A stretch of DNA of 64,000 nt from Anaeramoeba ignava BMAN (lineage: Eukaryota; Protista; Anaeramoebae): the NCBI GenBank assembly GCA_028826165.1, contig JAPDFW010000128.1, forward strand, positions 85,220 to 149,219. Reading direction: 5' to 3'. A model generated the notes under the pieces. That model was not told the DNA's origin. It saw only the letters and a list, made by a program, of their open reading frames with translations, and made no database searches. This document shows, in pieces, positions 18,299-53,200 of the stretch (its first letter is position 1; every line of letters starts with the position of its first letter). A program made the translations under genes and the position numbers.

Positions 18299-18410
18299 AT
18301 CAGAAACTCAGTTATAAAAATATTGAGTAACGGTTATAATCAAAGATTAAATTAAATAATCTCATATGACCGTCGTGAATTTGTTACATTTTTTCTTCAT
18401 TGTTTCTGAT
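18299..18410 (-). ncRNA. Box C/D snoRNA, snR73/U35 (SNORD35)-type guide for LSU rRNA Cm2959 (yeast numbering)
   Basis: 9-bp terminal stem ATCAGAAAC/GTTTCTGAT; box C ATGAAGA (18400-18394); box D CTGA (18311-18308); D' ATGA (18365-18362); C'-like TGATTA; 11-nt guide TCACGACGGTC antisense to conserved LSU GACCGUCGUGA. The D'+5 rule lands on the first C of GACCG. Confidence 0.88.
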
Positions 18411-41658: not shown

Positions 41659-43452
41659 ATGAATGAAATTTTATTTTGGGGTGAAAATGAATATCCAAAA
41701 ATTTTAAAACATGAACCAAAAATAATAAAAAAACCAATTCAATTTAAATTTGAAAATGAAAATGAAAATGAAAATGAAAAACAAATTAAACAAATTTCAT
41801 CATCAAATTCCTCAACAATTTTCCTTTTTGAAAATGGAAAAGCAATAGAATATTTAAAATATTCAAAACAAAATCCTGAAAAAATCCAAATTGAAAATAT
41901 TCAAAAAGTAACTGTTTGTTGTGAAGATGAAACTATTTTAACAAAAGAAGGAAATGTATTTGCCAAAGGATATGATATTAATCCAAAAAAATCTCCAAAA
42001 GAATTTATCAATATTTCATCATTAATTGAAGATACAAATGATAGAATAATTGAAGATATTGCTTCTGGATTTAAAACAATTTATTTATTAACTTCAAATC
42101 ATAATGCTTATGGAATTGGTTCAAATCATTTTGGTCAACTTGGTTTTGATTCTAAAACATTTAAAAAAACAAGAAAACCAATTTTAATGATGAAAAATGT
42201 TTCTAAAATATTTTCAGGAAATACTTCACAATTTGTTTTTCTTTTAAATTCAAATCAAGAATTATTTGGATGCGGATATAATGCATATGGTCGACTTGGA
42301 TTAGGAGAATCGATAAGAGAACCAAAAATTCAAAAATTAACCAAAATCCAAAATATTCCAAAAGGCAAAATAATTGATATTCAATGTGGAAATTTTCATT
42401 CAATAATGTTGATTGAAAATGAAAATGAAAATAAAAATCCAAAAAGAAAACTTTATTCATGTGGATATTATGAATGCAATGGACTTGGAAAAAATCAAGA
42501 AGATACTTATGAATTTACTAAAATTAAATCATCTTTATTTGAAAATGATAATATTATTGATTTTTCTGTTGGATACAACCATAATTTGATTTTAACTTCT
42601 AATTCAAAACTGATTGGATTTGGAAATAATAAACATGGTCAATTAGGAACTGGAAATACAAAAAATAAAAAAATTCCAATTCAAATTGAACTTCCTAAAT
42701 TAAGATTTAATGAAGATATTTCTAATTATCATGTTTCTTGTGGATCTTTTCATAATTCATTTCTTTATTATTATCCTTCTTCTTTCTCTAATCTTGAAGA
42801 AGATTTGATAAAACTATTTAGAAGAAAAGAATTTTGTGATATTTCATTTAAAACAGAAAATGGAGAAATAATCAAAGCTCATAAATTAATATTGAAATAT
42901 AGATTAAATCAAAATGAAAATCAAATTGAAAAACTTCAAGAAATTATTTCAAAAAAATCAATTAAAGAATTAAATCAAATATTTGAAATGATTTATTCAA
43001 ACAGAATAATAAATCCAAAATTATATTCTGAAATTAAAGAAATTATAAATTTAAATGAAAGAATTGAAGAAACAATGAAAAGAATTTATTTAAATGAAAA
43101 TGAAAAAGATTTCATAATTGAAAGAAAAGAAAAGAAATATAAATTTCCCAAATTAATATTAATAATGAGAAGTGAATTATATCGAGGAATGTTTTTATCT
43201 GTAACAGAAGATAAATCTAATAAAGTTACAGATTATAGTGAATTAAGTAATAAATCATTTGAAATATTTGAATATTGGATTTATTCAAATCAAATTAAAA
43301 ACGGAATTCAAATTACACAAGAAATTATTGATGAAATTCAAATTGGAATTGATTATTTTCAATTAAATCAAACAAATCCAAATTTATTTGATTTATTAAT
43401 TAACAAATTTAATAATCAAAATCAAAAAAAAGAAAATTGTTTCATTTTTTAA
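41659..43452 (+). CDS. RCC1-repeat plus BTB protein, paralog 3 (C-terminal CaaX-like CFIF)
   Basis: Same architecture; ends KKENCFIF. Confidence 0.92.
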   Translation: MNEILFWGENEYPKILKHEPKIIKKPIQFKFENENENENEKQIKQISSSNSSTIFLFENGKAIEYLKYSKQNPEKIQIENIQKVTVCCEDETILTKEGNVFAKGYDINPKKSPKEFINISSLIEDTNDRIIEDIASGFKTIYLLTSNHNAYGIGSNHFGQLGFDSKTFKKTRKPILMMKNVSKIFSGNTSQFVFLLNSNQELFGCGYNAYGRLGLGESIREPKIQKLTKIQNIPKGKIIDIQCGNFHSIMLIENENENKNPKRKLYSCGYYECNGLGKNQEDTYEFTKIKSSLFENDNIIDFSVGYNHNLILTSNSKLIGFGNNKHGQLGTGNTKNKKIPIQIELPKLRFNEDISNYHVSCGSFHNSFLYYYPSSFSNLEEDLIKLFRRKEFCDISFKTENGEIIKAHKLILKYRLNQNENQIEKLQEIISKKSIKELNQIFEMIYSNRIINPKLYSEIKEIINLNERIEETMKRIYLNENEKDFIIERKEKKYKFPKLILIMRSELYRGMFLSVTEDKSNKVTDYSELSNKSFEIFEYWIYSNQIKNGIQITQEIIDEIQIGIDYFQLNQTNPNLFDLLINKFNNQNQKKENCFIF

Positions 43453-43464
43453 AAAGAAATTACT

Positions 43465-43600
43465 AATGAAATTCAAATTGGAATTGATTATTTTCAATTA
43501 AATCAAACAAAACCAAATTTATTTGATTTATTAATTAAAAAATTTAATAATCAAAATCAAAAAAAAAAGAAAATTGTTTCATTTTTTAAAAAGAAATTAT
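43465..43600 (+). repeat. Tandem duplicate of the last about 130 bp of RCC1-BTB paralog 3
   Basis: ATGAAATTCAAATTGGAATTGATTATTTTC...GAAAATTGTTTCATTTTTTAAAAAGAAATTA repeats 43331-43465. Confidence 0.9.
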
Positions 43601-43675
43601 TAATAAATTTAATCAAAATTAAAAATAATTTTTTTCATTTTTTTCTAATTTTGTGGTTTTTTTTTGAAATAACTT

Positions 43676-44791
43676 ATGGAAAACGAAATTCCATCAATTG
43701 TAATTGATAATGGAACTTTTTCAATTAAATCAGGAATTTCAGGAGATGATCATCCCAAAAAAATTTTTCATTCAATAGTTGGAAGACCAAAAACAAACAA
43801 TGAAATGATCAAGTTCCGAAACAAAGAATATATTGGTGATGAAGCACAATCACAAAGAGAAGTATTATCGTTATCATATCCAATCAAAAGAAGAATAATT
43901 AGGAATTGGGATGATATGGAAAAGATTTGGAATTATACCTTTTTTAATCAATTAAGAATTCCTCCTGAAGAACACGCAATTTTATTAACTGAGCATCCCT
44001 TGAATCCAAAAGAAAACCGAGAAAAAACAACCCAAATTATGTTTGAAATATTTAACACTCCAGCTTTTTATATTATCAATCAGGGAACATTATCACAATA
44101 TGCTTCAGGAAGAAATACAGGATTTATTGTTGATTTCGGACATGAAGAAATCTTTTTTGCTCCTAATTATAGTGGCACAATTCTTCCCCATTTGGTCACA
44201 ACTTTGGAACTTGGAGGAAAGGATTTAACTGATTATTTAATGAAAATATTGAATGAAAAAGAAATCCAATTTCAAATTTCCGAAACAGAAATTGTTAGAG
44301 ATATTAAGGAAAAATTGAGTTATGTTGCTGATGATTTTAATCAAGAAATGAATAAAGAAGAAAAATTAATCCAAAAAAATTATGAACTGCCTGATGGAAA
44401 AATTATGACATTTGGGAATGAATTATTTAAGTGTCTTGAACCTTTGTTCCATCCTTCTCTTATTGGATTAGAAAAACCAGGAATATCTGAAATAATTTTT
44501 AATACTATTAAAAGATCTGATAATGATATTCAAAAAGATTTTTCTGCTAATATTATTTTATCAGGAGCTTCCTCAAATTTTCCTGGGATTGCAAATCGAC
44601 TTCAGAAAGAAGTTTCCCAATTATCTTCCTCTGTAATGAGGTTCAAAGTGATTCCACCACCTGAAAGAGAATATTCAGTTTGGATTGGAGGATCTATTTT
44701 AAGTTCATTATCTACTTTTGAAAATATGTGGATTTCTAAAGAAGAATATCAAGAAAATGGCGCATCTATTGTTCATAAGAAGTGTTTTTAA
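43676..44791 (+). CDS. Divergent actin / actin-related protein
   Basis: IVIDNG, IVGRP, YIGDEAQ, NWDDMEKIW, LLTE.PLNPK.NREK.TQIMFE, GG.DLTDYLMKIL, YELPDG, PPER.YSVWIGGSIL.SL.TF, IVH.KCF. Confidence 0.95.
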   Translation: MENEIPSIVIDNGTFSIKSGISGDDHPKKIFHSIVGRPKTNNEMIKFRNKEYIGDEAQSQREVLSLSYPIKRRIIRNWDDMEKIWNYTFFNQLRIPPEEHAILLTEHPLNPKENREKTTQIMFEIFNTPAFYIINQGTLSQYASGRNTGFIVDFGHEEIFFAPNYSGTILPHLVTTLELGGKDLTDYLMKILNEKEIQFQISETEIVRDIKEKLSYVADDFNQEMNKEEKLIQKNYELPDGKIMTFGNELFKCLEPLFHPSLIGLEKPGISEIIFNTIKRSDNDIQKDFSANIILSGASSNFPGIANRLQKEVSQLSSSVMRFKVIPPPEREYSVWIGGSILSSLSTFENMWISKEEYQENGASIVHKKCF

Positions 44792-45005
44792 AAAAGATTA
44801 ATTAGGGGAAAGTTAACTTTTTTCTTTTGAATTTTTGAATTTTTTTGATTTAAATAAAAAATTACTAAAAAAAAATAAAAATTAGTAATTATGATGAATC
44901 AAACAATATATAAGAAGTGAAATGGGAAGTAAAAAAAAAATAATTCATTTTTCTCTTTTTATTTTTTTATTTTTTTATTTTTTTATTTCAATTTTCAATT
45001 TAAAA

Positions 45006-47222
45006 ATGTGTGGAAGAACAGCACATACTTTAACAAGAGAACAATTAATCCAAAGATTTCAATCTTCTCAATTTCTTCAAGGAGAAAGACATTCACCAAG
45101 TTATAATGCTTCACCAAGAGATTTTTTACCAATATTATTTAACCCAACTACAATGAATATAAGATCAAATCAAAATTTAAATGAAAATCCAAATCAAAAT
45201 TTAAATGAAAATTTAAATCAAAATTCAAATGAAAATCCAAATCAAAATTTAAATGAAAATTCAAATGAAAATTTAAATCAAAATCCAAATCAAAATTTAA
45301 ATGAAAATTTAAACCAAAATCCAAATGAAAATTTAAATCAAAATTCAAATCAAAATTCAAACCAAAATCCAAATGAAAATTTAAATCAAAATCCAAATCA
45401 AAATTCAAACCAAAATCCAAATGAAAATTTAAATCAAAATCCAAATCAAAATCCAAATGAAAATTTAAATGAAAATCCAAATCAAAATCCAAATCAAAAT
45501 TTAAATGAAAATTTAAATGAAAATTTAAACCAAAATTCAAACCAAATTAAAGATGAAAAACCAAAATTATTAAATGTTAAAAAACAATCTTCACAAGTTT
45601 TACAAGATCAACAATCTCAAAATTCTCAACAAATTAATAAAAATCGTATTTTTTCTTCAATGAGATGGGGATTTGAAGGTTCATTTCAAAACCTTATAAT
45701 TAATTGTAGATCTGAAACAATGACTGAAAAATTTACTTTTAGAAATTTATATCAACATAATAGATGTATTATTGTTGTTGATGGATATTATGAATGGGAA
45801 AAAAAAGGAAAACGTAAAATTCCTAATTTTATTAAAAGCAAAAATAGTGATGTCTTATTAATTGCTGGACTTTATTCATCAGAAACAGATTCATTATTTA
45901 ATTTTGTAGTAATAACAACAAAAGCATCTCTTAGACTTAAACATATTCATGATAGAATGCCTGTATTACTTGATGAGGAAAATATTGATTTATGGCTTGA
46001 TCCAAATTATGATATTCAAAGTGATCCAAAAGGATTATTATCACCTTTAGATATTCCTCTTGAATATTATCAAGTTTCAACTCATGTTAATAATATTATT
46101 AATAAAGATAAGAAATGTATTGAACCTGTAAAATCAAATATCAAACCTTTATCAAGTTATTTTCAAATTGCGACAAAAAAGGAACAAAAACTCAATGAAG
46201 ATCAAAATCAAAATCAAAATCTAAATCAATTAAATCAAAATCAAAATCAAAACCAATTAAATCAAAATCAATTAAATCAAAATCAAAATCAAAATCAAAA
46301 TCAATTAAATCAAAATCAAAATCAAAATCAAAATCAAAATCAAAATCAATTAAATCAAAATCAAAATCAAAATCAAAATCAAAATCAAAATCAAAATCAA
46401 AATCAAAATCAATTAAATCAAAATCAAAATAAATTAAATCAAAATCAAAATCAAAATCAAAATCAAAATCAAAATCAAAATAATAATGAACAACTTGAAC
46501 AAAAATCTAAATTATCAACAGAAAATCAAAAATCAAAAACTTCAATAATTGATTCTTCAGAAATTCCTCATCAAAATTTACAACTTACTCACAAATCAAT
46601 AAAAGAAAAAGGCATTAGTCAAAATTTAATAACTCAAAAAATCTCTGTTAATAATATTGTAGTTAGAATTGAACAAAACCAATTATCAAAACCTAAAAAA
46701 TTTTTTAATCAATTTTCTGAATTTCCAATCCTTTCATCATTACCAAATTCACCAAAAAAAGAAACAAATTCAAAAACAAATAATTTAAATCCAGATACCA
46801 ATTATCAAAATTTAAAATTTAAATCAAGTCATTCTTTAGACTCAATTCCTTTTGCAATAAATCAAAAACAAAATCCAAACGTTACAAATTTAAAAAATCT
46901 TAAAAATCAAGTTTTATCAAATCCTATTCAAAAACCAAATTATGAAAATGCACAAAATTATTCAATGACTGAATTTATGTCACAAAATAAAAAACCAAAT
47001 CCTTTTTTGAATTATCTAAGAACTCAATCCAAAAGCAATGAAACTATTATCAATCCAAATCAAAATCCAAATCAAAATTTTAATAATAATCAAAATTATA
47101 AACCTTTTGAACATTTTAAATTTAAAAAATTTAATCAATTACATGAAAAAAGAAAACCAAATTCAGATTTAAATTCTTTTCAATATTCTTTATATGAAAA
47201 AGAAAGAAGAAAAATTATTTAA
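45006..47222 (+). CDS. HMCES: HMCES/SRAP abasic-site protecting protein
   Basis: Start MCGR at 45006 places the catalytic Cys at position 2; YNASP, MRWG, INCRSET, RCIIVVDGYYEW, IAGL, HDRMP motifs; long Asn/Gln insertions. Confidence 0.93.
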   Translation: MCGRTAHTLTREQLIQRFQSSQFLQGERHSPSYNASPRDFLPILFNPTTMNIRSNQNLNENPNQNLNENLNQNSNENPNQNLNENSNENLNQNPNQNLNENLNQNPNENLNQNSNQNSNQNPNENLNQNPNQNSNQNPNENLNQNPNQNPNENLNENPNQNPNQNLNENLNENLNQNSNQIKDEKPKLLNVKKQSSQVLQDQQSQNSQQINKNRIFSSMRWGFEGSFQNLIINCRSETMTEKFTFRNLYQHNRCIIVVDGYYEWEKKGKRKIPNFIKSKNSDVLLIAGLYSSETDSLFNFVVITTKASLRLKHIHDRMPVLLDEENIDLWLDPNYDIQSDPKGLLSPLDIPLEYYQVSTHVNNIINKDKKCIEPVKSNIKPLSSYFQIATKKEQKLNEDQNQNQNLNQLNQNQNQNQLNQNQLNQNQNQNQNQLNQNQNQNQNQNQNQLNQNQNQNQNQNQNQNQNQNQLNQNQNKLNQNQNQNQNQNQNQNNNEQLEQKSKLSTENQKSKTSIIDSSEIPHQNLQLTHKSIKEKGISQNLITQKISVNNIVVRIEQNQLSKPKKFFNQFSEFPILSSLPNSPKKETNSKTNNLNPDTNYQNLKFKSSHSLDSIPFAINQKQNPNVTNLKNLKNQVLSNPIQKPNYENAQNYSMTEFMSQNKKPNPFLNYLRTQSKSNETIINPNQNPNQNFNNNQNYKPFEHFKFKKFNQLHEKRKPNSDLNSFQYSLYEKERRKII

Positions 47223-47256
47223 AATCGGAAAAAAAAAATTAACTTTTAATTTTAAA

Positions 47257-47291
47257 TTTTTTCATTTTTTCATTTTTTTCATTTTTTTTTT
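47257..47291 (+). promoter_or_regulatory. Triple Inr-like T(n)CAT(n) motif upstream of the hairpin RNA
   Basis: Separate from the Raptor cluster at about 47480-47513; no ORF follows it. Confidence 0.55.
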
Positions 47292-47362
47292 GTTAAATAA
47301 AAATATAAAAAAAAAGAATAATAATAAAAAAATTTTATTTAAAATAATTAATAATAATTAAA

Positions 47363-47428
47363 AGCTCTTTAGATACCTGTTTGATTAATAAGTTAAATTT
47401 CAAACGGACAGATACAGAGCTGAGATTT
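47363..47428 (+). ncRNA. Single-hairpin H/ACA-like (AGA box) guide RNA; candidate scaRNA for U2 snRNA pseudouridylation
   Basis: Lower stem AGCTCT/AGAGCT; pocket TTAGATAC / ACAGATAC; upper stem CTGTTTGA/TCAAACGG; apical TTAA-TAAG-TTAA; AGA at 47423, 15 nt from the pocket top. The 3' pocket is antisense to U2 GUAUCUGU. Confidence 0.65.
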
Positions 47429-47557
47429 ATATTTTATTATTTTTTATTTTTTAATTTTTATTTTTTTTAAATAAAAAATTTTTTTTCATTTTTTTTCATT
47501 TTTTTCCATTTTTCTTTCTCTTTTTTTTATTATTATTATTATTATTCATTATTCATT

Positions 47558-50500
47558 ATGAGTCAAAATAATTTTACTTCTAATTCTTTAAATTCAAATG
47601 AAATAAAAAATAATTCAAATTCAAATTCAGATTTAAATAAAAATGAAAATAAAAATGAAAATCAAAATCAAAATGAAAATAATGAAAATGAAAATTCTCA
47701 ACCAAAAGTTTATTTAGAAAATAAAATTGAAATGAAACAAAACAATAAATTTTTAGAAGAAATGAAAGAAGTTTCACATGAAAGTTGGAAAATACAAAGC
47801 AGAGTAAATTGAAAGAAAAAATTGAATTTAAGAATTTAAAAATTAAAAATTAAAAATTAAAAATATTTAAAAGAAAAAAACAAAAAGTGCCATTTTGAAT
47901 TTATGTTTAAATATTGGAGTTGATCCTCCTGATGTTGAAAAACCTGATCCTTGTTCAATTCTTGAATGTTGGATAAATCCACTTTCTTTAAATGAACAAA
48001 AAGCACTTTCTGCAATTGGTGATACACTTGAAGAACAATATAAAAGATGGCAATCTAAAGTATAATAATTTAAAAATTATTTATAAAATTAAAATTAAAA
48101 ATTAAAATTAAAATTAAAATTAAAATTAAAATTAAAATTAAAATTCATTTATAAAATTAAAATTAAAATTATTTATAAAATTAAAATTAAAATTAAAATT
48201 AAAATTAAAATTAAAATTAAAAATCAAAATTAAAATTAAAATTAAAATTAAAATCAAAATTAAAATTAAAAATTAAAATTAAATTTAAAATTAAAATCAA
48301 AATTAAAATTATTTATAAAATTATTTATAAAATTAAAATTAAAATTAAAATTCATTTATAAAATTAAAATTAAAATTAAAATTAAAATTAAAATTAAAAT
48401 CAAAATTAAAATTAAAATTAAAATTAAAATTAAAATTAAAATTAAAATTAAAATTAAAATTAAAATTAAAATTAAAATTAAAATTAAAATTAAAATTAAT
48501 ATTAAAAGATTCGATATGAACAATTACTTGATCCATCAGTAGATAACCTTAAAAAAGCATGTATTCAACATCAAAGATTATCCCAAAACGAAAGAATATT
48601 ATTTCATTTCAATGGACATGGAGTACCAAAACCAACAAAAAATCGAGAATTATGGTTTTTCAATCAAAATTACACACAATATATACCAGTATCAATATAC
48701 GAAATATTAACATGGCTTGGGAACTCAGCAATTTTAGTATTAGATTGTGCAAAAGCAGACTTACTTGCACCAGCATTTTTATCAAAAGAAAACACAATTT
48801 TAAATTCAGTTAATAGTGAAGAAGAAAAAGATTACATTTTACTAGCACCATGTCAAAAAAAGCAAGATTTACCAACAAATCCAAGATTCCCAGCTGATCT
48901 ATTCACAAGTTGTTTAACAACACCAATTAAAACCTCACTTCTTTGGCATACTCACTCAAATATCTATTCAAAAACTTTATTGAACAACATTCATGTCGAA
49001 GATCTTGATAAAATTCCTGGACGTTTGATGGAAAGACACTCCCCATTGGGTGAGCTCAACTGGATATTCACATCAATAACTGACATGATAGCTTGGAGTT
49101 CTTTTTCAAATCGTTTATTCAAAAAGTTATATCGAGAGGATCTTCTAGTTGCAGCAATTTTTCGGAATTTTTTACTTGCAGAAAGAATCATGAAATCAAT
49201 GAATTGCACACCATTTTCTATTCCGCAGCTTCCCTCCACAGATCAACATCCGTTGTGGAAAACCTGGGATCTTGCTGTTGATATCTGCATATCTCAGCTA
49301 CCTGAATTCCTGTCAGATTCTTCATATGTTTTTAAATCAAGTACTTTTTTTAGAGATAATGTTATTGGTTTTGAAAATTGGCTTCTTTCAGGTACTCAAG
49401 CTAAATATGGTGTAGATCTTCTCCCAATTCTATTACAATTACTTCTTAGTCAAAGCTATAGAAAACATGCTCTTCATTTAATTGCTAAATTTATGGATCT
49501 TGGTTCTTGGGCTGTTCATAAAGCTTTGACTGTTGGTATTTTTCCTTATATGCTTATGCTTCTTTCTACTCATGAATTGGAAATGAAATTGATTTTGGTT
49601 TCAATTTGGGGAAAGATTTTACTTTTTGATAAAGTACAAATCAAACAAAATTTAATTAAAATTCAAATTAAAATTAAAATTCATTTCGAAATTAAAATTA
49701 AAATTAAAATTCATTTCGAAATTAAAATTCATTTCGAAATTAAAATTAAAATTAAAATCCAAATTAAAATTAAAATTAAAATTAAAATTATAATTAAAAA
49801 TTAAAATTAAAATTAAAATTAAAATTCATTTCGAAATTAAAATTAAAATTAAAATTAAAATTTATAATCAAAATTAAAATTAAAATTAAAATCAAATTTA
49901 AAATCAAAAATTAAAATTAAAATTAAAATTAAAATTAAAATTAAAATTAAAATTAAAATTCATTTTAAAATTAAAATCCAAATTAAAATTTTAAAATTAA
50001 AATGAAAATTAAAATTAAAATTAAAATTAAAATTCAAAATTTATTTGAAAATTTATTTGAAAATTTATTTGAAAATTCATTTGAAAATTAATTGTTAAAA
50101 GTCTTGCCAAGCTGATATTGTAAAAGAAAAAAGTTATATACATTTTATAGACTTATTAGCTTCTTCTGAAATTTCACATGATCATGAATCTGCTGCTGCT
50201 TTCGTTCTTTCTTTAATTCTAGATCATTCTCATGAAGCACAAATAGGTTGTTTAAATTCAAATTTACTTCCAATTTGTTTATCAAAATTGGGAGAAAAAT
50301 CAGAATCTCGAAAATGGTCTTGTTTATGTTTATCAAAATTATTAGAAGGATTTGAAGAAGCAAAAAAACAAGCAGTTGCAGCAGGAATTTCAGATAAATT
50401 ATTCAAATTACTTAAAGATCCAAATCCAATTATTAGAGCTTGTGTAATTTATGGATTATCAAATACAATTAGTGAAAATAATGATCAAGAATCAAGAAAT

Positions 50501-53200
50501 TCAGAAGAATTTAGTATTAGTATTTCATTACTAGGAACAGCAAATGATGGAAGCCCTATTGTTAGAAGAGAATTACTTGTTTTTTTATCAAAATTAATTT
50601 GTCTTCATGAAGGTTGAAATTTGATTTTGATTTCAATTTAAAATATTTTAATTTTAATTTTAATTTTAATTTTAAATAATTTCATTTTAAATAGAAAAAG
50701 TTCAAAAAGTTGCTATGGATATAGATGAAGAATTATCACAATTTAAAACTGAATCTATTGAAGATGAAAACTCAGATCATCATTCTGCAATATTTTCAAT
50801 GTGGTGGAACACTTTAATGCAATTTAGTTCAGATCCTTATGATGAAATCAAAGAATTAGCAGATGATTTTATTAATAAATTAAGAAATCATTGGAAACCA
50901 ATTGAATATATTGATTCAGAAGAAACAGAAAATTCAACATTAAAAAAACAAAAACAAAAACAAACAAGAAAAGGATCATTGAATAAAAATCACAATAGCG
51001 CACTCGGTTTATTAAGAAATCGAAGTGATAAATCCTTATTCGCTGAAGCTGTTGATACCAAAAAACATTCCAAAAGCTTTGCTTTCTCAAATTCACCAAC
51101 TAAAAATAAAATGGCTACACATAAAATATTAAAAGGAATTCAGGATCAAACAATGGAAATGGAAAGTTGTCCATTAAATAAAAATGAAAGCGATGTTTCA
51201 AATTTAAAACCAAGAGGAAGCTCAAAAAACCTTCAAAAAGAATCAAGAAGTAAAATCAGTCAGGAAACAAAAGAAACCGAAAAGGAAGAAAAAATGGTTC
51301 CTTTACAATCAACTCTATTTGATTTGTGTGTTGATTCTTATTCTCCTCCTGAAGATTTTCAAGCAAATAACTCGGTTTCAATCTCAATTTCCATGTCTTT
51401 TCCAATATCTTCGCAAATCTCAGAATCAAACAATCAGCACAAAGCATGGAGAATAAGAGAAATTGAAAAAACAAAAAGATCAATGATCCAAAATGTCAAA
51501 GAATCATCAATCCAAAAAGCAAAAATCCAACTCAACGATCAACGCGCAGTTATTGATAACCAAACAGCAAAGGTTACCTCAGTTGTTTTCCATCCATATG
51601 AATCAATGCTTGTTTGTTCCGATGGTGAAGATGAAATTTTTGTTTGGGATTGGGTCGAAAATTCAGGCAAATTACTTCATCATTTCCATAACGGAAATTC
51701 GGGACAATCAAGAATTTCTTATTTGTCTTTAATGAATGAATTGACTGCAAATCCTTATGTTATTTCTGGAACAACAAACGGAGTCGTGAAAATTTGGAAG
51801 AATTGCTTTATTCAAAACCAAAACAAGAATGAAAATGAAAATGAAAATGAAAATGAGAATTATAATCATCACGAAAAAAATGAAAACCAAAATGAAAATG
51901 AAAATGAAAACCAAAATGAAAATCAAAATCAAGAAATTTTAAATCAAGATATTAACAAATCAAAAGAAAAACCCAGTTTAGTAACAGCATGGGCAATGTT
52001 CCCATCATTTGAGAACAAAGGAAACATTGCAGATTCCAATTCTGTTTTTGATTGGAATCCAAATAATGGAATTGTATCAGGATTTGGAGCAAATCGCATG
52101 ATTCGACTTTGGAATGTTGAAACAGAAAATCAACTACAAACTTTGCCAACAAATAGCGAACGTGGTTTAAGTTGTTTGAATCACGATCCAAAAAATTCTA
52201 ATATTCTATTTGGTGGATCTTATAATGGAAAACTTTTAGTTTATGATATTCGTGTAAAACCTGCTATGTCTCTTGTTCAATGTTTAACTGAGCATAAGAA
52301 TCAAATTATTAATTTTAAAAAGCAATTTGATTCAGAAGAAGTTTTGATTTCTGGTTCTGTTCAAGGTGATGTTAAGTTTTGGGATTTGCGAAAGCCTTAT
52401 GCTTTAAAAACATTAACACCTTATCAAGGTTTGATGACTGCACTTGAGATACATGATTATTGTCCTTTAATTGCTTGGTAATTTTGAATTGATATTTTAA
52501 TATTTAATTTAATATTTATTTTAATATTTAATTTAATATTTATTTTAATATTAATTTTAATATTTATTTTAATATTTAATATTTAATTTAATATTTATTT
52601 TAATATTAATTTTAATATTTATTTTAATATTTATTTTAATATTTATTTTAATATTTATTTTAATATTTATTTTAATATTTATTTTAATATTTATTTTAAT
52701 ATTTATTTTAATATTTATTTTAATATTTATTTTAATATTTAATTTAATATTTATTTTGGAATATTTATTTTAATATTTAATTTAATATTTATTTTGGAAT
52801 ATTTATTTTAATACTTAATTTAATATTTATTTTAATATTTATTTTAATATTTATTTTAATATTTATTTTAATATTTAATTTAATATTTAATTTAATATTT
52901 ATTTTGGAATATTTATTTTAATACTTAATTTAATATTTATTTTAATATTTATTTTAATATTTATTTAGTGGTTCTAATATTTATTTAGTGGTTCATTTTA
53001 ATAATCATTCTAATAATCATTCTGTAAAGATTTTTAATACAAATGGAGATTTATTGAATATTATTGGATATTATGATTCTTTTATTGTTCAAAAACTTGG
53101 AATGGTTCATGCAGTTTCATTTCATCCATATCAAATTTATTTAGCAGCAACAGCAGATTCATTAATTTCTGTTTTTATTCCATCATATTTAAAAAATTAA
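47558..53200 (+). CDS. RPTOR: Raptor/Kog1 (TORC1 subunit), 6 exons
   Basis: LCLNIGVDPPD, LFHFNGHGVPKPT, FPADLFTSCLTTPIK, PLGELNWIFTSITD.IAW, REDLLVAAIFRNFLLAERIM, HEAT and WD40 repeats. Exons 47558-47803, 47874-48059, 48509-49633, 50102-50612, 50695-52477, 52969-53200. Confidence 0.96.

What the first reader, a model, noticed from the sequence alone, without database searches (positions are those of the whole stretch)
47363..47428. Stand-alone single-hairpin AGA-box guide RNA with a CAB-like loop, predicted to pseudouridylate U2 snRNA
Seen: a GC-containing island in AT-rich intergenic DNA folds into a 6-bp lower stem, an 8x8 internal loop, an 8-bp upper stem (a G-U pair favours the + strand), an apical UAAG tetraloop, and AGA+UUU 15 nt below the pocket top. 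It has its own triple Inr-like motif upstream. Known: H/ACA guides place the target 14-16 nt from the H/ACA box; single-hairpin AGA guides occur in trypanosomes and Euglena; scaRNA CAB boxes are ugAG in apical loops; U2 contains GUAGUAUCUGUUCUUAUCAG. Inference: the 3' pocket ACAGAUAC pairs 8 bp with U2 GUAUCUGU, and GAUA in the 5' pocket pairs with UAUC, pointing to Psi43/44 (human numbering) beside the branch-point recognition region. A minimal, independently transcribed, one-hairpin scaRNA would be unusual.
Basis: partly seen in the sequence, partly recalled or inferred. Interest (0 to 1): 0.8.

Follow-up and report, generated by a model that had tools for sequence, protein, structure and literature searches.

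The report
One-hairpin guide RNA for U2
In the anaerobic amoeba Anaeramoeba ignava, the RNA that in animals marks splicing RNA U2 at two places (SCARNA8) appears as two separate half-size genes of a one-hairpin type known as a system only from trypanosomes and Euglena; this is predicted from DNA, and no RNA has been seen yet.

Summary
Real and more than chance. The genome is Anaeramoeba ignava BMAN. The 66-nt element matches the 3' hairpin of SCARNA8/U92, the U2 Psi43/44 guide. It and its allelic-type copy are the only genome-wide matches to that Rfam family, though weak (22 bits). It pairs 8+7 bp around U44 of the amoeba's own U2 (0 of 150 shuffles reach this), and the 5' pocket has co-varied with a change in that U2. 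No partner hairpin lies upstream. The missing half, a U2-Psi34 guide, is a separate lone AGA hairpin on contig C136; an SSU-1191 guide (C66) and a fourth candidate (C96) share the build. One-hairpin AGA guides, also for snRNA, are known in trypanosomes and Euglena. New here: a metamonad, a split SCARNA8, stand-alone genes, CAB-like loops. The scan noted a similar candidate before (s1-703153).

The parts
47363..47428 (+). Predicted mature single-hairpin H/ACA-like guide RNA, counterpart of the SCARNA8/U92 3' hairpin (5' end not mapped)
47363..47368 (+). Lower stem, 5' arm (pairs with 47416-47421, 6 bp); an A lies 1 nt upstream
47369..47376 (+). 5' pocket strand; 47369-47375 pair 7 bp (one G-U) with native U2 46-52; co-varied relative to the Rfam SCARNA8 consensus
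47377..47384 (+). Upper stem, 5' arm (8 bp with 47400-47407); an alternative base of C-G, C-G and a bulged U is possible
   Evidence: alternative read from the sequence, compare S. pombe guide in PMC5473140
47385..47399 (+). Apical loop; CAB-like UAAG at 47389-47392, aligned to the UGAG of the SCARNA8 consensus
47400..47407 (+). Upper stem, 3' arm
47408..47415 (+). 3' pocket strand, 8 bp with U2 36-43; same 8-mer as the conserved pocket of vertebrate, fly and S. pombe guides
47416..47421 (+). Lower stem, 3' arm
47423..47428 (+). AGA box, 15 nt from the pocket top, at the ACA position of the SCARNA8 alignment, plus 3-nt tail
47260..47285 (+). Three TTTCATTTT repeats, a motif that in this genome mostly lies just before gene starts; probable initiator region of the guide's precursor
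44922..47222 (+). Upstream neighbour: SRAP/HMCES-domain gene, stop 140 nt before the hairpin (context only)
47558..47804 (+). Downstream neighbour: probable first exon of an intron-containing gene, no Pfam match (context only)

Best explanation
A stand-alone gene for a ~66-nt single-hairpin pseudouridylation guide, the counterpart of the 3' hairpin of SCARNA8/U92. Shown from DNA: the fold, the box position, bipartite pairing with the native U2, absence of an upstream partner hairpin, and a separate lone-hairpin gene for the other SCARNA8 target (U2-34). Inferred: Pol II starts at the motif cluster ~80-100 nt upstream, the leader is trimmed, one set of Cbf5/Nop10/Nhp2/Gar1 binds the hairpin through the AGA box, and Cbf5 converts U2 U44 (probably also U43 by an alternative pairing) beside the branch-point recognition region. 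The UAAG loop may recruit a WDR79-type protein. Sub-odds: U2-44 guide 0.93; mature one-hairpin form 0.85; own promoter 0.65; working CAB box 0.55.
For: Fold z -3.67. Only Rfam match is SCARNA8, with a 13-nt identity across the upper-stem base and 3' pocket; the only two genome-wide matches at E<=10 are this element and its copy. 15-bp pocket pairing at U2 U44 is the best target among U2, SSU and LSU; 0 of 150 pocket shuffles reach it, maximum 13. All three native U2 genes carry the same target and differ from human at 47-50; the guide's 5' pocket has changed to match. Upstream 70-120 nt: 1-5% GC, fold z -0.5 to 1.3. Target-based patterns found a U2-34 guide on C136 (7- and 10-bp stems, z -4.78, box at 14 nt, nothing folding on either side) and an SSU-1191 guide on C66 (6+6 bp, box at 15 nt, found with the box left open as A-A/C/G-A). 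Both U2 guides have N-A-A-G in the apical loop, the rRNA guide has none; background 4%. Two intact-looking Cbf5 genes. Anatomy fits the trypanosome consensus.
Against: The SCARNA8 score is far below the gathering cut-off (22 vs 53 bits; genome-wide E 0.94). No homologue from another species was found, so no covariation across relatives. The C45 copy is part of a >10-kb duplicate at 90-99% identity and is not independent. Only four guides were found; a generic search gave chance-level counts, so the genome-wide rule rests on few loci. C66 has a weak downstream stem (as stable as 7% of AT-rich windows). WDR79 could not be searched.
Confidence: 0.8

Rival explanations
1. A real U2-43/44 guide, but one hairpin of a longer two-hairpin H/ACA RNA whose second hairpin is made almost only of A and U and escapes folding tests, or whose mature form keeps the 5' leader.
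For: A/U-only stems can be drawn on either side. C66 has a downstream stem with G-C pairs. The motif cluster lies 80-100 nt upstream, enough room for a hairpin. Earlier notes mention longer H/ACA-type RNAs in this genome (s1-692454, s1-707811; unchecked).
Against: Upstream folding is at background level and 1-5% GC. The box is not followed by the A that an H box (ANANNA) needs. The natural partner hairpin exists as its own gene on C136, with no fold on either side. The C96 candidate has no fold on either side.
Confidence: 0.11
2. A non-functional relic (pseudogene) of a SCARNA8-like RNA, with U2-43/44 now made by a stand-alone enzyme such as Pus1.
For: AGA instead of ACA and loss of a hairpin would cripple a yeast or vertebrate guide (general knowledge). 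Pus1 can make Psi43 in other species (PMC5473140). No expression data.
Against: Both stems are intact, the pocket tracks the amoeba's own U2 sequence, and the same AGA build recurs in unrelated guides, which decay would not produce.
Confidence: 0.05
3. A chance hairpin, or a 3'-end or promoter element of the flanking genes.
For: It lies in a 335-nt gap between two same-strand genes; the Rfam score is sub-threshold.
Against: 15-bp bipartite match to U2 at a known modified site with the right box distance; none of 57 chance pattern matches in metagenomes has this anatomy.
Confidence: 0.04

Closest known systems
SCARNA8/U92 (Rfam RF00286); Xenopus pugU2-34/44; Drosophila scaRNA:PsiU2-35.45
   Same: 3' pocket 8-mer and upper-stem base, 15-nt box distance, target U2-44 (43), CAB-like tetramer at the aligned loop position.
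   Different: No 5' hairpin or H box; AGA not ACA; intergenic not intronic; the U2-34 function sits in a separate gene on another contig; 5' pocket changed with the local U2.
S. pombe pugU2-43/44 (SPNCRNA.1709)
   Same: Same 3' pocket; encoded downstream of a protein gene; a U that can bulge from the upper stem in the Psi43 configuration (PMC5473140).
   Different: Described as a box H/ACA RNA with an ACA box and the guide loop in its 3'-terminal pocket.
Trypanosomatid and Euglena single-hairpin AGA (H/ACA-like) guides
   Same: One hairpin, 57-91 nt, stem I 5-8 bp, A before the stem, 1-3 nt to the AGA box, 13-16-nt rule (PMC2613932); snRNA targets are known and need MTAP/WDR79 (PMC6698659).
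   Different: Different supergroup (Metamonada); genes stand alone rather than in polycistronic clusters; canonical long pairing with U2, whereas trypanosome snRNA pairing is called non-conventional; the term CAB does not occur in that trypanosome paper.
Archaeal single-hairpin H/ACA sRNAs
   Same: One hairpin, one protein set (PMC7991803).
   Different: Archaeal guides carry a K-turn or K-loop for L7Ae (general knowledge); none is evident here; the target is a spliceosomal RNA.
Isolated single-hairpin ACA RNAs of Giardia (candidate 16) and Entamoeba
   Same: One-hairpin form outside Euglenozoa has been suggested (PMC1950533; PMC3542256).
   Different: Those have ACA boxes, target rRNA, and in Entamoeba are thought to be cut from two-hairpin precursors.

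Membership tests
H/ACA-type pseudouridylation guide | Hairpin with internal pocket between two stems | tested here: met
H/ACA-type pseudouridylation guide | Bipartite pairing leaving target U-N unpaired, 14-16 nt from the box | tested here: met
   8+7 bp at U2 U44, 15 nt
H/ACA-type pseudouridylation guide | Expressed RNA ending 3 nt after the box and bound by Cbf5 | not testable with these tools
Canonical two-hairpin box H/ACA RNA | Hairpin-hinge (H box ANANNA)-hairpin-ACA | tested here: not met
   no significant upstream hairpin; terminal box AGA; DNA-level test only
SCARNA8/U92 (RF00286) | Score at or above gathering cut-off 53 bits | tested here: not met
   22 bits
SCARNA8/U92 (RF00286) | 3' hairpin guiding U2-43/44 with the conserved pocket | tested here: met
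SCARNA8/U92 (RF00286) | 5' hairpin guiding U2-34 in the same RNA | tested here: not met
   found as a separate gene on C136
Single-hairpin AGA guide (trypanosome/Euglena type) | Size 57-91 nt, stem I 5-8 bp, A before stem, 1-3 nt spacer, AGA, perfect stem II base, loop >=5 nt | tested here: met
   against the consensus
Single-hairpin AGA guide (trypanosome/Euglena type) | Destabilised on Cbf5 knock-down | not testable with these tools
   experiment needed
Single-hairpin AGA guide (trypanosome/Euglena type) | Encoded in polycistronic snoRNA clusters | tested here: not met
   all four loci stand alone between genes
scaRNA | CAB box (UGAG, A3G4 crucial) in the terminal loop | tested here: inconclusive
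   UAAG aligned to UGAG; AAAG in the C136 guide; none in the rRNA guide; few loci
scaRNA | WDR79/TCAB1 binding and Cajal-body location | not testable with these tools
   no family model or tool-given query for WDR79 was available

The most novel reading that the evidence does not exclude
All modification-guide H/ACA RNAs of Anaeramoeba are stand-alone single AGA hairpins, with CAB-like loops marking the snRNA guides. If parabasalids or other metamonads share this, either the one-hairpin AGA form is ancestral in eukaryotes and two-hairpin RNAs such as SCARNA8 arose by fusion of older single guides, or the same reduction with the same ACA-to-AGA switch happened twice.
Probability: 0.45. Interest if true: 0.75.

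Novelty: new variant of a known kind. Interest (0 to 1): 0.58.

Why it matters
Two-hairpin build is treated as the eukaryotic rule, with trypanosomes and Euglena as the exception. A second supergroup with one-hairpin AGA guides makes the question of ancestral versus convergent form testable. Both SCARNA8 halves are still recognisable by sequence as separate genes, which gives a direct case of fission or fusion of a guide RNA and dates guided modification of U2-34 and U2-44 deep in eukaryotes. A 66-nt natural guide with a CAB-like loop is also a minimal model for how one Cbf5 set works without a partner hairpin.

Tried and rejected
Slip: the pattern was modelled on the C66 and C136 guides, but its tail also covers 47425-47434 and matched there, against the operators' note; I did not repeat it and take nothing new about those places from it (the C96 candidate came from that list). 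The tail was box plus six W but could not match the window element. Rfam at gathering threshold: nothing. Metagenome pattern: 57 chance matches, none with both stems and a box. Patterns for two LSU guides were too loose and their lists were cut: uninformative, not negative. Generic stem patterns gave chance-level counts and three candidates rejected on folding or coding-like flanks. SRAP homologue search for synteny in sister species found nothing; exact-protein look-up found nothing. Intronic location considered: GTTAAA occurs upstream but was 1 of 18 rough donor sites, and no acceptor AG follows before the next gene's start; not favoured.

Full report
Organism and setting. The genome has 42,843,398 bases in 147 contigs, exactly the figures for Anaeramoeba ignava BMAN in Table S1 of PMC11550330, a free-living anaerobic metamonad. 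The element lies in a 335-nt gap between a SRAP-domain gene (44922-47222) and an intron-containing gene starting at 47558, both on the + strand.

Observation. The 66 nt fold into a 6-bp lower stem, an 8x8 loop and an 8-bp upper stem, z = -3.67. The box starts 15 nt below the pocket top. The UAAG tetraloop is a near-optimal fold, not the best one. A second identical copy on C45 belongs to a duplicate of more than 10 kb at 90-99% identity and adds no independent evidence.

Identity. Rfam finds nothing at gathering level. At a loose threshold the only match in the 401-nt region is SCARNA8, E = 0.037, aligning the element to the 3' hairpin with 13 identical bases across the upper-stem base and 3' pocket, UAAG under UGAG, and AGA under ACA. 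Searched over the whole genome, that family returns only this element and its copy (22 bits, E 0.94). The score alone is weak. SCARNA8's 3' loop makes U2 Psi43 and Psi44 (PMC8763049; PMC5473140), and the latter paper gives the same 3'-pocket word as highly conserved across species.

Target. The genome has three U2 genes of two types, identical over the target. Using human numbering, the 3' pocket pairs 8 bp with 36-43 and the 5' pocket 7 bp with 46-52, leaving U44-C45 free: the textbook geometry for Psi44. Psi43 is possible with 7+7 bp, three free bases and 14 nt to the box. The 15-bp match is the best among U2, SSU and LSU, and no pocket shuffle reaches it (0 of 150, maximum 13). The guide's 5' pocket differs from the Rfam consensus in just the way needed to keep pairing; in this register it would give 1 bp with the human sequence. 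This is guide-target covariation from one comparison.

One hairpin or two. The 70-120 nt upstream are 1-5% GC and fold no better than shuffles. To test whether this is the organism's habit I searched the genome by target. A pattern for the U2-34 pockets gave 26 matches, one of which (C136, about 117192-117255, +) has a 10-bp upper stem flush with both pockets, a 7-bp lower stem, AGA at 14 nt, z = -4.78 and 10% GC flanks with no fold. Its pairing (7+3 bp) is not significant by itself (44 of 150 shuffles); the anatomy carries the case. This is the counterpart of SCARNA8's 5' hairpin, on another contig. A pattern for the SSU site equivalent to yeast 1191, with the box left open, gave a lone hairpin on C66 (about 214101-214034, -) with 6+6 bp and AGA at 15 nt (6 of 150 shuffles); only 100 of 194 matches were listed. 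A structure filter over 193 kb of held DNA passed six boxes: these two guides, two antisense readings of one, and two chance cases. From that rate I estimate under 1% chance that either pattern list would contain such a hairpin. A fourth candidate on C96 (180900-180817, -) has a 6-bp lower stem, AGA at 15-16 nt and an extended 5' side; its target is uncertain (U2 position 10 in both U2 types, or LSU). For C66 a second, downstream hairpin is not excluded (7% of AT-rich windows fold as well).

CAB-like loop. [quoted passage not shown] Both U2 guides and the C96 candidate have N-A-A-G in the apical loop, the rRNA guide does not, and such a word occurs in 4% of AT-rich 9-mers. This is suggestive on few loci. 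WDR79 could not be searched.

Transcription. TTTCATTT-type motifs lie within 110 nt before 10 of 19 gene starts, against 3 of 21 after stops and 3 of 19 in reverse (small, rough sample). The triple cluster at 47260-47285 has no ATG for 280 nt, and the next gene has its own cluster, so it probably starts the guide's precursor; a leader of 80-100 nt would need trimming. It could instead belong to the SRAP 3' end. No RNA data were reachable.

Mechanism. Shown: fold, box position, target pairing, missing upstream partner, separate U2-34 gene, two Cbf5 genes with DKCLD, TruB and PUA domains, 75% identical. Inferred from established H/ACA biology: one protein set binds one hairpin and isomerises U44, likely also U43, next to the branch-point helix.

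Comparison and novelty. It works like the SCARNA8 3' hairpin but fails membership of the two-hairpin family. It meets the structural consensus of trypanosome AGA guides (PMC2613932) but not their clustered organisation. Single-hairpin guides for snRNA are published for T. brucei and called unique to these parasites in their dual use (PMC6698659); a review lists trypanosomes as the exception to the two-hairpin rule (PMC7991803). Isolated one-hairpin ACA RNAs were suggested in Giardia and Entamoeba. I found no report of snoRNAs in Anaeramoeba or of AGA single hairpins in metamonads, but the library is partial and parabasalid H/ACA RNAs were not covered. Verdict: new variant of a known kind.

I worked beside them afterwards, except for one slip: the tail of the pattern also covered 47425-47434 and matched there. 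It was not repeated; statements on the box and tail rest.

Noticed in passing
L052 (G000:C136 about 117192-117255, +): Lone AGA hairpin predicted to guide U2 Psi34, counterpart of the SCARNA8 5' hairpin, downstream of a nitroreductase gene; AAAG in its loop.
   Followed up: yes
L042 (G000:C66 about 214101-214034, -): AGA hairpin predicted to guide the SSU site equivalent to yeast 1191 (snR35/SNORA13 counterpart); weak possible second stem downstream.
   Followed up: yes
L115 (G000:C96 180900-180817, -): Fourth AGA hairpin candidate with a small extra stem on the 5' side of the pocket; 3' pocket could pair with the differing 5' ends of both U2 types around the same U.
   Followed up: partly
L118 (C86:303669 region) and L119 (C114:147230 region): Two Cbf5/dyskerin paralogues, 75% identical, both with the catalytic motif; most eukaryotes have one (general knowledge). 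They might divide rRNA and snRNA guides.
   Followed up: partly
L001 (C13) versus L002/L003 (C57, C67): Two distinct U2 snRNA types, identical around the branch-point region but different at the 5' end, in stem IIb and in the 3' half.
   Followed up: partly
upstream of all four guide loci, e.g. window 47283-47299: A pyrimidine run followed by GTT(A/C)(A/G) lies 20-120 nt upstream of each guide; a pattern made after the fact occurs in 3% of AT-rich windows. Unexplained: processing signal, promoter element or weak splice donor.
   Followed up: partly
window 18299-18410, - strand: C/D snoRNA candidate with an antisense element to the LSU peptidyl-transferase region and its own TTTCATTT cluster just upstream; stand-alone snoRNA genes look normal for this genome.
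   Followed up: partly
window about 42700-53100 versus G000:C45: Duplicate of more than 10 kb at 90-99% identity, probably a second haplotype.
   Followed up: partly
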